Shown here piece after piece: positions 545-63,529 of a stretch of 64,000 nt of DNA. The stretch comes from Octopus sinensis (lineage: Eukaryota), in the NCBI RefSeq assembly GCF_006345805.1, contig NW_021832721.1:51992-115991 (forward strand), written 5' to 3'. Position 1 is the stretch's first letter. Each line of letters opens with the position of its first letter. The notes beneath the pieces were generated by a model. The model was given only the letters and a program-made list of their open reading frames with translations, was not told the DNA's origin and did not search any database. The translations under genes and the position numbers were made by a program.

Positions 545-616
545 AGTTTTGTTAAACTGGAAAGATTCCGGAATGTTTCTGCTTGGATTTCCTGGAGATT
601 ATTATTACCCAAATGC
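545..616 (-). CDS. LRR exon: [24 protein letters not shown]
   Basis: tttgacag|G...CT|gtaggt, 72 nt. Confidence 0.9.

Positions 617-63529: not shown

What the first reader, a model, noticed from the sequence alone, without database searches (positions are those of the whole stretch)
545..63529. Hidden minus-strand array of 19 single-LRR 72-nt exons spanning the whole window
Seen in sequence: a recurring plus-strand motif (acttac-AG...aaactgggaagat...ct-g) is the reverse complement of AG|72 nt|GTAAGT. The exons are at 63458, 61919, 60091, 55791, 53427, 51051, 48538, 44508, 40951, 34723, 32826, 31518, 29474, 25245, 22946, 12382, 9358, 1401 and 545. Each encodes one 24-aa LRR, and they splice into an open frame of about 456 aa with no stop, while the surrounding introns are full of indels and dead TEs. 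The ORF track mostly misses them. Established: single-LRR 72-nt exons are typical of LGR/relaxin-receptor-type and other extracellular LRR genes. Inference: this is an expanding LRR receptor ectodomain that continues beyond both window ends.
Basis: partly seen in the sequence, partly recalled or inferred. Interest (0 to 1): 0.9.

Follow-up and report, generated by a model that had tools for sequence, protein, structure and literature searches.

The report
Octopus-type receptor gene's LRR exon array
The window is an internal stretch of a large-intron octopus-type cell-surface protein gene, in which each of 19 tiny exons encodes one leucine-rich repeat; the array is real and has grown by recent internal duplication, but it belongs to a gene family already described in octopuses.

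Summary
All 19 minus-strand units sit at the stated coordinates as AG|72 nt|GT exons in phase 1-1. They splice into 455 stop-free codons, one 24-residue LRR per exon (LRR_8 E = 6e-136). The strict motif occurs 17 times on that strand against 1.6 expected on both strands.

The closest relatives are Octopus proteins at 46-51% identity. One of them is a 1566-aa LRR + GPS + 7tm_2 adhesion GPCR. An annotated O. bimaculoides homologue has the same exon design, so the source is an octopod-like genome, not an LGR gene.

The array is a four-LRR super-repeat copied by segmental duplication, introns included (86-97% identity). It also shows one exon deletion and three dead exons.

Scaffold codons diverge less than flanking introns (1.4% vs 5.4%). 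Differences cluster in exon nt 2-36, the predicted ligand-facing strand, in a mosaic pattern that suggests short-tract conversion.

No cap, GPS or 7TM exon lies in the window, and transcription could not be tested.

Verdict: a real feature, a new member of a known octopus-specific LRR/adhesion-GPCR expansion, of moderate interest.

The parts
63458..63529 (-). LRR exon 1, type A: [24 protein letters not shown]
62669..62731 (-). decayed LRR pseudo-exon (homologous to the one at 15137)
61919..61990 (-). LRR exon 2, type B: [24 protein letters not shown]
60091..60162 (-). LRR exon 3, type C: [24 protein letters not shown] (identical to exons 34723 and 25245)
55791..55862 (-). LRR exon 4, type C, donor GTAAAT
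53427..53498 (-). LRR exon 5, type B (D subtype): [24 protein letters not shown]
51051..51122 (-). LRR exon 6, type A
48538..48609 (-). LRR exon 7, type B mosaic: the 5' half resembles exon 61919; the 3' half and downstream intron resemble exon 22946
44508..44579 (-). LRR exon 8, identical to exon 7 (4.0-kb tandem duplicate)
40951..41022 (-). LRR exon 9, type B (M subtype)
34723..34794 (-). LRR exon 10, type C
32826..32897 (-). LRR exon 11, type B (D subtype)
31518..31589 (-). LRR exon 12, type A
29474..29545 (-). LRR exon 13, type B (M subtype)
25245..25316 (-). LRR exon 14, type C
22946..23017 (-). LRR exon 15, type B (D subtype)
15137..15216 (-). decayed LRR pseudo-exon with stops
14464..14551 (-). 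LRR pseudo-exon, type B: [24 protein letters not shown]. The frame is open, but the acceptor AG is lost and the donor is GTAAAT
12382..12453 (-). LRR exon 16, type A
9358..9429 (-). LRR exon 17, type B (H subtype)
1401..1472 (-). LRR exon 18, singleton type
545..616 (-). LRR exon 19, singleton type, donor GTAGGT
28310..42933 (-). copied stretch of the 11.5-kb-period super-repeat: 28310-31440 matches 39787-42933 at 95.5% identity
42098..50973 (-). 4.0-kb tandem duplicate: 42098-46953 matches 46119-50973 at 96.9% identity. The junctions at 42933/42934 and 46953/46954 lack the ~0.8-kb piece that carries the type-A exon in the copies at 51051 and 31518, so this is an exon deletion followed by duplication

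Best explanation
The window is an internal segment of one large-intron gene on the minus strand of an octopod-like cephalopod genome. It encodes the LRR solenoid of a secreted or cell-surface protein. That protein belongs to the Octopus family that includes LRR-containing adhesion GPCRs (LRR array, Cys-rich linker, GPS, 7tm_2).

Shown:
- There are 19 canonical phase-1/phase-1 exons of 72 nt, each encoding one 24-residue 'typical' LRR.
- The array is a four-LRR super-repeat (A-B-C-B') that grew by tandem segmental duplication, introns included. It also lost units: one exon deletion and three dead exons.
- Hydrophobic and Asn scaffold codons are under purifying selection.
- The differences between young copies cluster in exon nt 2-36. 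This stretch encodes the beta-strand and adjacent residues that face the concave side in solved LRR proteins.
- The copies are mosaics, which suggests short-tract ectopic conversion between exons.

Inferred:
- The exons are spliced in series into a glycosylated horseshoe. There are 10 N-x-S/T sequons and no cysteines.
- The variable concave face of that horseshoe binds a ligand.
- By analogy with the full-length relative, binding or pulling on the ectodomain would signal through a GAIN/GPS-7TM module encoded downstream, beyond coordinate 1.
- The signal peptide and N-terminal cap would lie upstream, beyond coordinate 64000.
For: - Exon anatomy and open frame.
- Excess of the motif over chance.
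- LRR_8 match at 6e-136.
- Best relatives: O. sinensis P0001 at 51% identity, O. bimaculoides P0002 at 45%, and O. sinensis P0127 at 46% identity over 100% of the query. P0127 carries LRR_8 + GPS + 7tm_2.
- Exon design: P0002 maps onto its own 62-kb O. bimaculoides gene as 72-nt single-LRR exons with the same ttacag|A...CT|gtaagt boundaries. Window exons plus flanking intron align to that locus at 75-82% identity, and a SINE-like element aligns at 89%.
- Duplicated introns at 86-97% identity.
- Amino-acid changes on minimum-spanning-tree branches: scaffold 8, concave 43, other 37, against 33/22/33 expected under uniformity (P = 3e-9). There are 0 exon indels against 21 gap events per 3900 flank nt.
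- Scaffold codons diverge 1.4% against 5.4% for introns (P = 0.001), and this is robust to the choice of settings. pN/pS is 0.10 for scaffold codons and 1.9 for concave codons.
- Mismatch clusters at exon nt 4-25 (permutation P = 0.0008 and 0.0024) and mosaic nearest neighbours.
- The repeat types A, B and C each have closer counterparts in Octopus proteins (15-19 of 24 residues) than in each other (11-12 of 24).
- The family is described as an octopus-specific, co-localised adhesion-GPCR expansion with some LRR-bearing members (PMC6408891).
Against: - There is no transcript evidence.
- No near-identical annotated protein of 250-2389 aa was found in the 5.8-billion-protein collection. The gene is therefore unannotated there, or the source genome is absent.
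- No LRRNT, LRRCT, GPS or 7TM exon lies in the window, so the receptor class is inferred only from paralogues. Some of those paralogues (P0001, 461 aa) have no TM domain in their models.
- Overall pN/pS is about 0.9, and exon divergence is about equal to intron divergence. Taken alone, that would also fit relaxed constraint.
- The 'concave codons faster than introns' result loses significance with looser flank criteria (P = 0.04 to 0.65).
Confidence: 0.8

Rival explanations
1. The array is an orphan or pseudogenised relic. It was amplified recently as part of a segmental duplication and is no longer part of an expressed gene. Its open frame then reflects youth rather than selection.
For: - Introns are duplicated together with the exons at 86-100% identity.
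- Overall pN/pS is 0.89 and exon divergence (6.5%) is about equal to intron divergence (5.4%).
- No annotated protein matches closely.
- Three copies are already dead.
Against: - There are no stops or indels in 1368 nt. At the flank indel rate about 4.7 gap events are expected on the 12 close branches (Poisson P about 0.009; calculated by me from the counts).
- All 38 splice sites are intact.
- Scaffold codons are about four times more conserved than introns.
- Replacements avoid scaffold positions (P = 3e-9).
- The old A, B and C types kept the LRR scaffold across species.
- The three dead copies show what unmaintained exons look like in this same locus.
Confidence: 0.1
2. It is the ectodomain of an LGR/relaxin-receptor-type (rhodopsin-class) GPCR.
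For: - The best solved-structure match by sequence is the LGR5 ectodomain (1e-60).
- LGR4- and LGR6-like proteins are among the hits.
- From general knowledge, LGR genes also use one LRR per ~72-nt exon.
Against: - LGR-like hits are about 30% identical (E around 1e-31 to 1e-33), against 46-51% for the Octopus family.
- The full-length family member has GPS + 7tm_2, not 7tm_1.
- Similarity among 'typical' LRRs is generic. LRRC15, IGFALS, LRIG1 and TLR3 score nearly as well.
Confidence: 0.05
3. The exons are cassette modules used combinatorially by exon skipping or alternative choice. One gene would then yield many LRR ectodomains. This is compatible with the best explanation as an added layer.
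For: - Every exon is 72 nt and phase 1-1, so any subset stays in frame.
- The exons differ mainly in a ligand-facing patch.
Against: - Donors are near-consensus GTAAGT and acceptors are strong throughout, as expected for constitutive exons.
- Symmetric phase is a generic property of LRR exon arrays.
- There are no docking-site-like or selector-like conserved intron elements beyond what duplication explains, although this was not searched for specifically.
- There are no RNA data.
Confidence: 0.1
4. Part of the copy number is an assembly artefact, with tandem repeats over-expanded or haplotypes placed in tandem.
For: Some units are nearly identical. 48538 and 44508 have 100% identical exons and 99-100% identical flanks, and 34723 and 25245 are 99-100% identical close to the exon.
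Against: - Over their full length the duplicated blocks differ by about 3-4.5% (96.9% and 95.5% identity) and by indels, and they carry different transposable-element insertions.
- Most units are 5-15% diverged.
- An artefact would remove at most one or two of the 19 exons.
Confidence: 0.07

Closest known systems
Octopus-specific LRR-bearing adhesion GPCR expansion (Ritschard et al. 2019 'group 3'; for example O. sinensis LOC115224769 = P0127, O. bimaculoides 'TLR5'-named P0002, O. sinensis 'LRRC15-like' P0001)
   Same: - The 24-residue repeat has the same motif (..N-D/K/N-I-x-E/K-I-x-x-G-S/T-F-x-N-L-P/S-S-L..).
- Identity is 46-51% over the array.
- The design of one LRR per 72-nt phase-1 exon and the splice-site context are identical in the O. 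bimaculoides gene.
- Introns are kilobases long. The O. sinensis relatives P0001 and P0127 span 229 and 209 kb.
   Different: - At about 50% identity this is a different paralogue, or a different species' gene, and not one of the annotated ones.
- The defining GPS/7tm_2 part is not in the window.
- The array holds at least 19 LRRs in 63 kb and is still open at both ends. I counted about 10, 13 and 20 LRRs by eye in P0001, P0002 and P0127.
- The exon-level birth-and-death and the hypervariable patch were not mentioned in the passages of the 2019 paper I read.
LGR4/5/6 and relaxin receptors RXFP1/2
   Same: - Both have 'typical' 24-residue extracellular LRRs.
- Both use one repeat per ~72-nt exon (general knowledge, not tested here).
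- The LGR5 ectodomain is the best PDB sequence match.
   Different: - Identity is about 30%.
- LGRs end in a rhodopsin-class 7TM, whereas the nearest full-length relative here has GPS + 7tm_2.
Jawless-vertebrate VLR germline LRR cassettes
   Same: - Both are genomic arrays of single-LRR modules.
- In both, variation concentrates on the concave beta-strand.
- In both, neighbouring modules are patchwork copies of each other.
   Different: - VLR cassettes are not exons and are copied somatically into an incomplete gene.
- Here every module has canonical splice sites and a constant phase.
- The mosaicism here is germline and evolutionary, and nothing suggests somatic assembly.
Other extracellular LRR proteins (LRRC15, IGFALS, LRIG1, chondroadherin-like, Slit, insect artichoke/chaoptin)
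   Same: The repeat class is the same and the profile scores are strong.
   Different: - Identity is only 25-35%.
- These proteins have Cys-capped LRR blocks of fixed size.
- There is no evidence of shared gene structure.

Membership tests
Leucine-rich repeat, 'typical' 24-residue extracellular class (Pfam LRR_8) | LxxLxLxxNxL core with a 24-residue period and a conserved Phe in the variable segment | tested here: met
   LRR_8 scores 6e-136 with 11 matched stretches. N5, F15, L18, L21 and L24 are invariant in 19/19 repeats, and L2, I7, G13 and S20 in 18/19.
Spliced eukaryotic exon array | Canonical AG/GT boundaries, a common phase, and an open frame across the junctions | tested here: met
   19/19 units have an AG acceptor and a GT donor (17 are GTAAGT). 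All are phase 1-1, and the product is 455 codons without a stop.
Spliced eukaryotic exon array | Junction-spanning transcripts | not testable with these tools
   No transcriptome of the source organism is reachable. The protein searches, limited to 250-2389 aa, found no spliced near-identical product.
Octopus LRR adhesion-GPCR family | LRR array most similar to family members, with the same exon design | tested here: met
   The top hits by identity are Octopus P0001 (51%), P0127 (46% over 100% of the query) and P0002 (45%). The O. bimaculoides gene has identical 72-nt phase-1 LRR exons.
Octopus LRR adhesion-GPCR family | GPS motif and 7tm_2 domain downstream of the LRRs | not testable with these tools
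   tblastn of the family proteins finds none in the window.
Octopus LRR adhesion-GPCR family | Signal peptide plus Cys-capped LRRNT, and the Cys-rich segment after the last LRR | not testable with these tools
   None is present in the window, and the spliced product has no cysteines. The caps must lie outside the window if they exist.
LGR / relaxin-receptor type GPCR | Closest relatives are LGRs, with a rhodopsin-class 7TM (7tm_1) and, in some, LDLa | tested here: not met
   LGR-like hits are about 30% identical and rank below the Octopus GPS/7tm_2 family. The 7TM itself lies outside the window and cannot be checked.
VLR-type somatic LRR cassettes | Cassettes without splice signals that flank an incomplete germline receptor gene | tested here: not met
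   All modules carry canonical splice sites in one phase.
Toll-like receptor | TIR domain, and an irregular LRR ectodomain usually carried in one or a few exons | tested here: inconclusive
   The 'TLR5' name on P0002 is an automatic label. Pfam finds no TIR domain in P0002. There is no TIR-like ORF in the window, but only ORFs of 120 aa or more were scanned.

The most novel reading that the evidence does not exclude
The array is a germline diversity generator. It would be a copy-number-variable set of interchangeable single-LRR exons whose ligand-facing patches are reshuffled by short-tract conversion. The exons would be used combinatorially by exon skipping, so that different cells, for example sucker or arm-nerve-cord neurons, display different adhesion-GPCR ectodomains. 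That would make it an LRR analogue of Dscam or clustered-protocadherin diversity in octopus.
Probability: 0.07. Interest if true: 0.75.

Novelty: new member of a known kind. Interest (0 to 1): 0.35.

Why it matters
Octopus-specific adhesion GPCRs were singled out in 2019 as a lineage-specific, co-localised expansion. The paper reported signs of positive selection and expression in the arm nerve cord, suckers and skin, but the analysis was based on the 7TM part.

This window shows how the ligand-binding end of such a gene evolves. One LRR per exon makes every repeat a frame-neutral unit that can be duplicated, deleted or patched. The young copies differ almost only in the strand predicted to face the ligand.

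If the gene is expressed, it is a tractable case of exon-level birth-and-death that shapes the binding surface of a sensory or adhesion receptor in a cephalopod. It also flags a likely unannotated or under-annotated gene.

It is not a new kind of system.

Tried and rejected
- **Structure prediction.** I did not pursue this by any other route.
- **Species identification through a LINE ORF (35715-37265).** The only close hit (94% aa, 95.6% nt over 1865 bp) is a 2-kb contig from a metagenome sample whose name suggests Bologna, Italy. All other hits are at most 66% identical and come from assorted marine animals. The species therefore stays undetermined.
- **Missed search.** In hindsight, a short query of about 150 aa might have caught spliced transcript fragments in read-archive assemblies.
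- **Family-specific non-LRR exons.** I searched the window for LRRNT, the Cys-rich linker, GPS and 7TM exons. Only low-complexity noise came back.
- **Linker domains.** My by-eye impression that the family's linker contains Ly6/uPAR-, SEA- and HRM-like modules was not supported. Pfam finds only GPS there, so I make no such claim.
- **Positive selection on concave codons.** These codons diverge 13% against 5.4% for introns (P = 4e-5) under strict flank homology. The excess fades to P = 0.04-0.65 under looser criteria. I report it as suggestive and rest the case on the clustering and mosaic tests instead.
- **Negative scans.** Rfam and tRNA scans were empty. Pfam scans of 20 other ORFs found only reverse-transcriptase fragments.
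- **Plus-strand motif matches.** The three plus-strand AG-N72-GTAAGT matches are not exons.

Full report
**Observation**

I reverse-complemented the 19 stated positions.
- Each is a 72-nt unit preceded by a pyrimidine tract and (c/t)AG.
- The donor is GTAAGT in 17 units, GTAAAT at 55791 and GTAGGT at 545.
- Joined in order, the units read open for 455 codons in one frame only. That frame puts one nucleotide of a split Leu codon at the start of each exon and two (CT) at its end, so every exon is phase 1-1.
- The other two frames carry dozens of stops.
- The strict pattern ACTTAC-N72-CT occurs 17 times on the relevant strand against 1.6 +/- 1.2 expected on both strands together.
- Three matches on the opposite strand are copies of one duplicated intron fragment with stops in every frame.

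- 14464-14551 still has an open frame, but its acceptor AG is gone and no alternative AG keeps the frame.
- 15137-15216 and 62669-62731 have stops or are eroded. They are homologous to each other, so that exon was probably dead before the unit was copied.

**What the exons encode**

- Each exon gives x-L-x-x-N-x-I-x-x-I-x-x-G-x-F-x-N-L-x-S-L-x-x-L.
- Pfam LRR_8 matches at 6e-136.
- Positions L2, N5, I7, G13, F15, L18, S20, L21 and L24 are invariant or nearly so.
- The highest entropy is at positions 1, 4, 23, 6, 16, 8, 22 and 3. Six of these eight are the x positions of LxxLxLxxNxL, which form the concave beta-sheet face in solved LRR proteins (established structural knowledge).
- The product has 10 N-x-S/T sequons and no cysteines. 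That fits the interior of a glycosylated extracellular solenoid whose Cys caps lie elsewhere.

**Whose gene it is**

- Among 250-796-aa proteins, the best hits are O. sinensis 'LRRC15-like' (P0001, 51% identity) and O. bimaculoides 'toll-like receptor 5' (P0002, 45%).
- For longer candidates I used a length-padded query scored over residues 1-455. The hit with the highest identity is O. sinensis LOC115224769 (P0127, 1566 aa, 46% identity over 100% of the query).
- P0127 has LRR_8, a GPS motif and a 7tm_2 domain, so it is an adhesion GPCR. The gene next to P0001 also encodes LRR + GPS + 7tm_2.
- P0001 and P0127 span 229 and 209 kb in O. sinensis.
- P0002's 62-kb O. bimaculoides gene could be fetched as L001. 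Its LRRs map one per 72-nt exon with the same ttacag|A...CT|gtaagt boundaries.
- Window exons with about 100-270 nt of adjoining intron align to L001 at 75-82% identity, and a 160-bp SINE-like element aligns at 89%.
- I conclude that the window comes from an octopod, or at least a close cephalopod relative. The gene is a paralogue or orthologue of this family, not one of the annotated genes.
- Ritschard et al. 2019 (PMC6408891) described this family. [quoted passage not shown]
- The species could not be identified.

**What is not in the window**

tblastn with four family proteins finds no LRRNT, post-LRR Cys-rich segment, GPS or 7TM exon. The first exon needs two nucleotides from an upstream exon, and the last exon ends on an incomplete codon. 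If the array is functional, the gene must therefore continue past both ends.

**Architecture and history**

- By sequence the exons fall into type A (63458, 51051, 31518, 12382), type B (nine exons), type C (60091, 55791, 34723, 25245) and two singletons.
- In gene order they read A-[dead]-B-C-C-B'-A-B-B-B-C-B'-A-B-C-B'-[dead, dead]-A-B-x-x. This is a four-LRR super-repeat (A-B-C-B') with local extras.
- Self-alignment shows that the introns were copied along with the exons. 28310-31440 matches 39787-42933 at 95.5% identity (period 11.5 kb). 42098-46953 matches 46119-50973 at 96.9% (period 4.0 kb). Many other blocks match at 86-94%.
- At 42933/42934 and 46953/46954 the roughly 0.8-kb piece that carries the type-A exon in the copies at 51051 and 31518 is missing. 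That is an exon deletion which was then duplicated.
- Each repeat type has a closer counterpart in Octopus proteins (15-19 of 24 residues) than in the other types in the window (11-12 of 24). The types are therefore old and the copies recent.

**Selection**

I built a minimum spanning tree of the exons. This is conservative for the exon-excess test, because it pairs the most similar exons.
- Amino-acid changes number 8 at nine a-priori scaffold positions, 43 at six concave positions and 37 at nine other positions. A uniform distribution would give 33/22/33 (P = 3e-9).
- On 12 branches whose flanks are clearly homologous, the introns differ at 211 of 3900 sites (5.4%) with 21 gap events. The exons differ at 56 of 864 sites (6.5%) with no gap. 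About 4.7 gap events would be expected (Poisson P about 0.009; calculated by me from the counts).
- By codon class, scaffold codons differ at 1.4% (P = 0.001 against introns). This holds in all four parameter settings.
- Concave codons differ at 13.0% (P = 4e-5), but that excess weakens to P = 0.04-0.65 when poorly aligned flanks are admitted.
- pN/pS is 0.10 for scaffold codons, 0.65 for other codons, 1.9 for concave codons and 0.89 overall.
- The array is therefore not decaying neutrally. A strongly constrained scaffold and a fast-changing surface average out to the intron rate.

**How the variable patch changes**

- Exons 48538 and 22946 differ by 8 nucleotides, all at exon nt 4-25. The next 350 nt or so hold only 4 differences (permutation P = 0.0008).
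- Exons 40951 and 9358 have 12 differences within 25 nt at exon nt 2-25 (P = 0.0024).
- In the A family all exon differences lie at nt 11-36.
- The same codons (4, 6 and 8) are hit repeatedly.
- Exon 48538/44508 is a mosaic. Its 3' half and downstream intron are 100% and 99% identical to 22946. Its 5' half is only 78% identical to 22946 but 89% identical to 61919.
- The simplest reading, which is an inference, is short-tract ectopic conversion or recombination between non-equivalent exons. It would move 20-30-nt patches that encode the ligand-facing strand, and selection would tolerate or favour the result.

**Mechanism proposed**

- Shown: the exon anatomy, the family resemblance, the duplication and loss history, the scaffold constraint, and the clustered mosaic variation.
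- Inferred: the exons are spliced in series into at least 19 turns of an LRR horseshoe on a secreted or membrane protein, and the concave face binds a ligand.
- Inferred by analogy with P0127: the ectodomain is tethered to a GAIN/GPS-7TM module, so that binding or traction signals as in other adhesion GPCRs. This is established for that receptor class generally and was not tested here.
- I put the LRR-ectodomain-of-this-family reading at about 0.8. The adhesion-GPCR ending specifically is about even odds, because some family models, such as P0001, lack a TM region.

**Rivals**

- A dead orphan array is possible but sits poorly with intact splice sites, the absence of indels, the scaffold constraint, and the contrast with the three truly dead copies.
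- LGR membership is not supported. LGR5 is the best solved-structure match (1e-60), but LRRC15, IGFALS, LRIG1 and TLR3 follow closely. LGR-like proteins are about 30% identical, against about 50% for the Octopus family.
- Combinatorial exon use is allowed by the symmetric phase, but nothing supports it positively. The splice sites look constitutive.
- Assembly inflation could affect at most the two nearly identical pairs.

**Verdict**

It is ordinary eukaryotic gene structure, 'hidden' only from prokaryote-style ORF tracks. It belongs to an octopus gene family already in the literature, so I rate it a new member of a known kind. The exon-level birth-and-death and the patchwork hypervariable strand are the parts worth following up. 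Interest: 0.35.

Noticed in passing
One has an open frame but has lost its acceptor AG. The other two have stops or erosion. The copies at 15137 and 62669 are homologous to each other, so that exon was probably dead before its unit was duplicated.
   Followed up: yes
window 42933/42934 and 46953/46954: Junctions where a ~0.8-kb piece is missing. In the copies at 51051 and 31518 that piece carries the type-A exon. This is an in-frame exon deletion that was then copied by the 4.0-kb tandem duplication.
   Followed up: partly
window 35487-38872 (minus strand): A fairly young LINE-like element. Its ORFs of 516, 223 and 225 aa include reverse-transcriptase matches. It is 95.6% identical over 1865 nt to a 2-kb contig of metagenome ERZ22666216, whose sample name suggests Bologna, Italy. 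That fits DNA of the same or a related, possibly edible, cephalopod in that sample.
   Followed up: partly
window 18645-21110 (+) and 26662-28047 (-): Two further reverse-transcriptase ORF fragments lie in introns (RVT_1 at 1e-23 and 1e-21). The copies differ between duplicated units, so the insertions happened after the duplication.
   Followed up: partly
window 4436-4597 and 10356-10512 (inverted): A SINE-like element of about 160 bp occurs twice. The two copies are 93% identical to each other and 89% identical to a copy in the O. bimaculoides locus L001 (49865-50026). ARAGORN calls no tRNA.
   Followed up: partly
window 1814-2375, 12035-12194, 24754-24916; also 17251-17422, 35350-35557, 33592-34272, 45280-45504, 49311-49541, 55101-55362: There are long microsatellites: (AAG)n of up to 560 bp, which is (CTT)n on the gene's sense strand and often lies a few hundred nt from an exon, plus many (ATT)n and (TA)n tracts. 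The plus strand is purine-rich overall (A 33.5%, G 19.5%, T 31.1%, C 16.0%), with strong skews at 1-4000.
   Followed up: no
window 43035-43114, 47054-47133, 51851-51930 (plus strand): Three plus-strand AG-N72-GTAAGT matches mimic the exon signature. They are copies of one duplicated intron fragment with stops in all three frames, so they are not exons.
   Followed up: yes
L001 (O. bimaculoides CM046629.1:10400675-10483064), positions 1963-9893 and 73980-78596: Window-like LRR exons also hit the genes on both sides of P0002. The family is therefore tandemly clustered in O. bimaculoides, as Ritschard et al. reported for the adhesion-GPCR expansion.
   Followed up: no
window 2805-3287 and 3380-3862: A local 575-bp-period tandem duplication (90% identity) lies inside the 7.9-kb intron between exons 9358 and 1401.
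   Followed up: no
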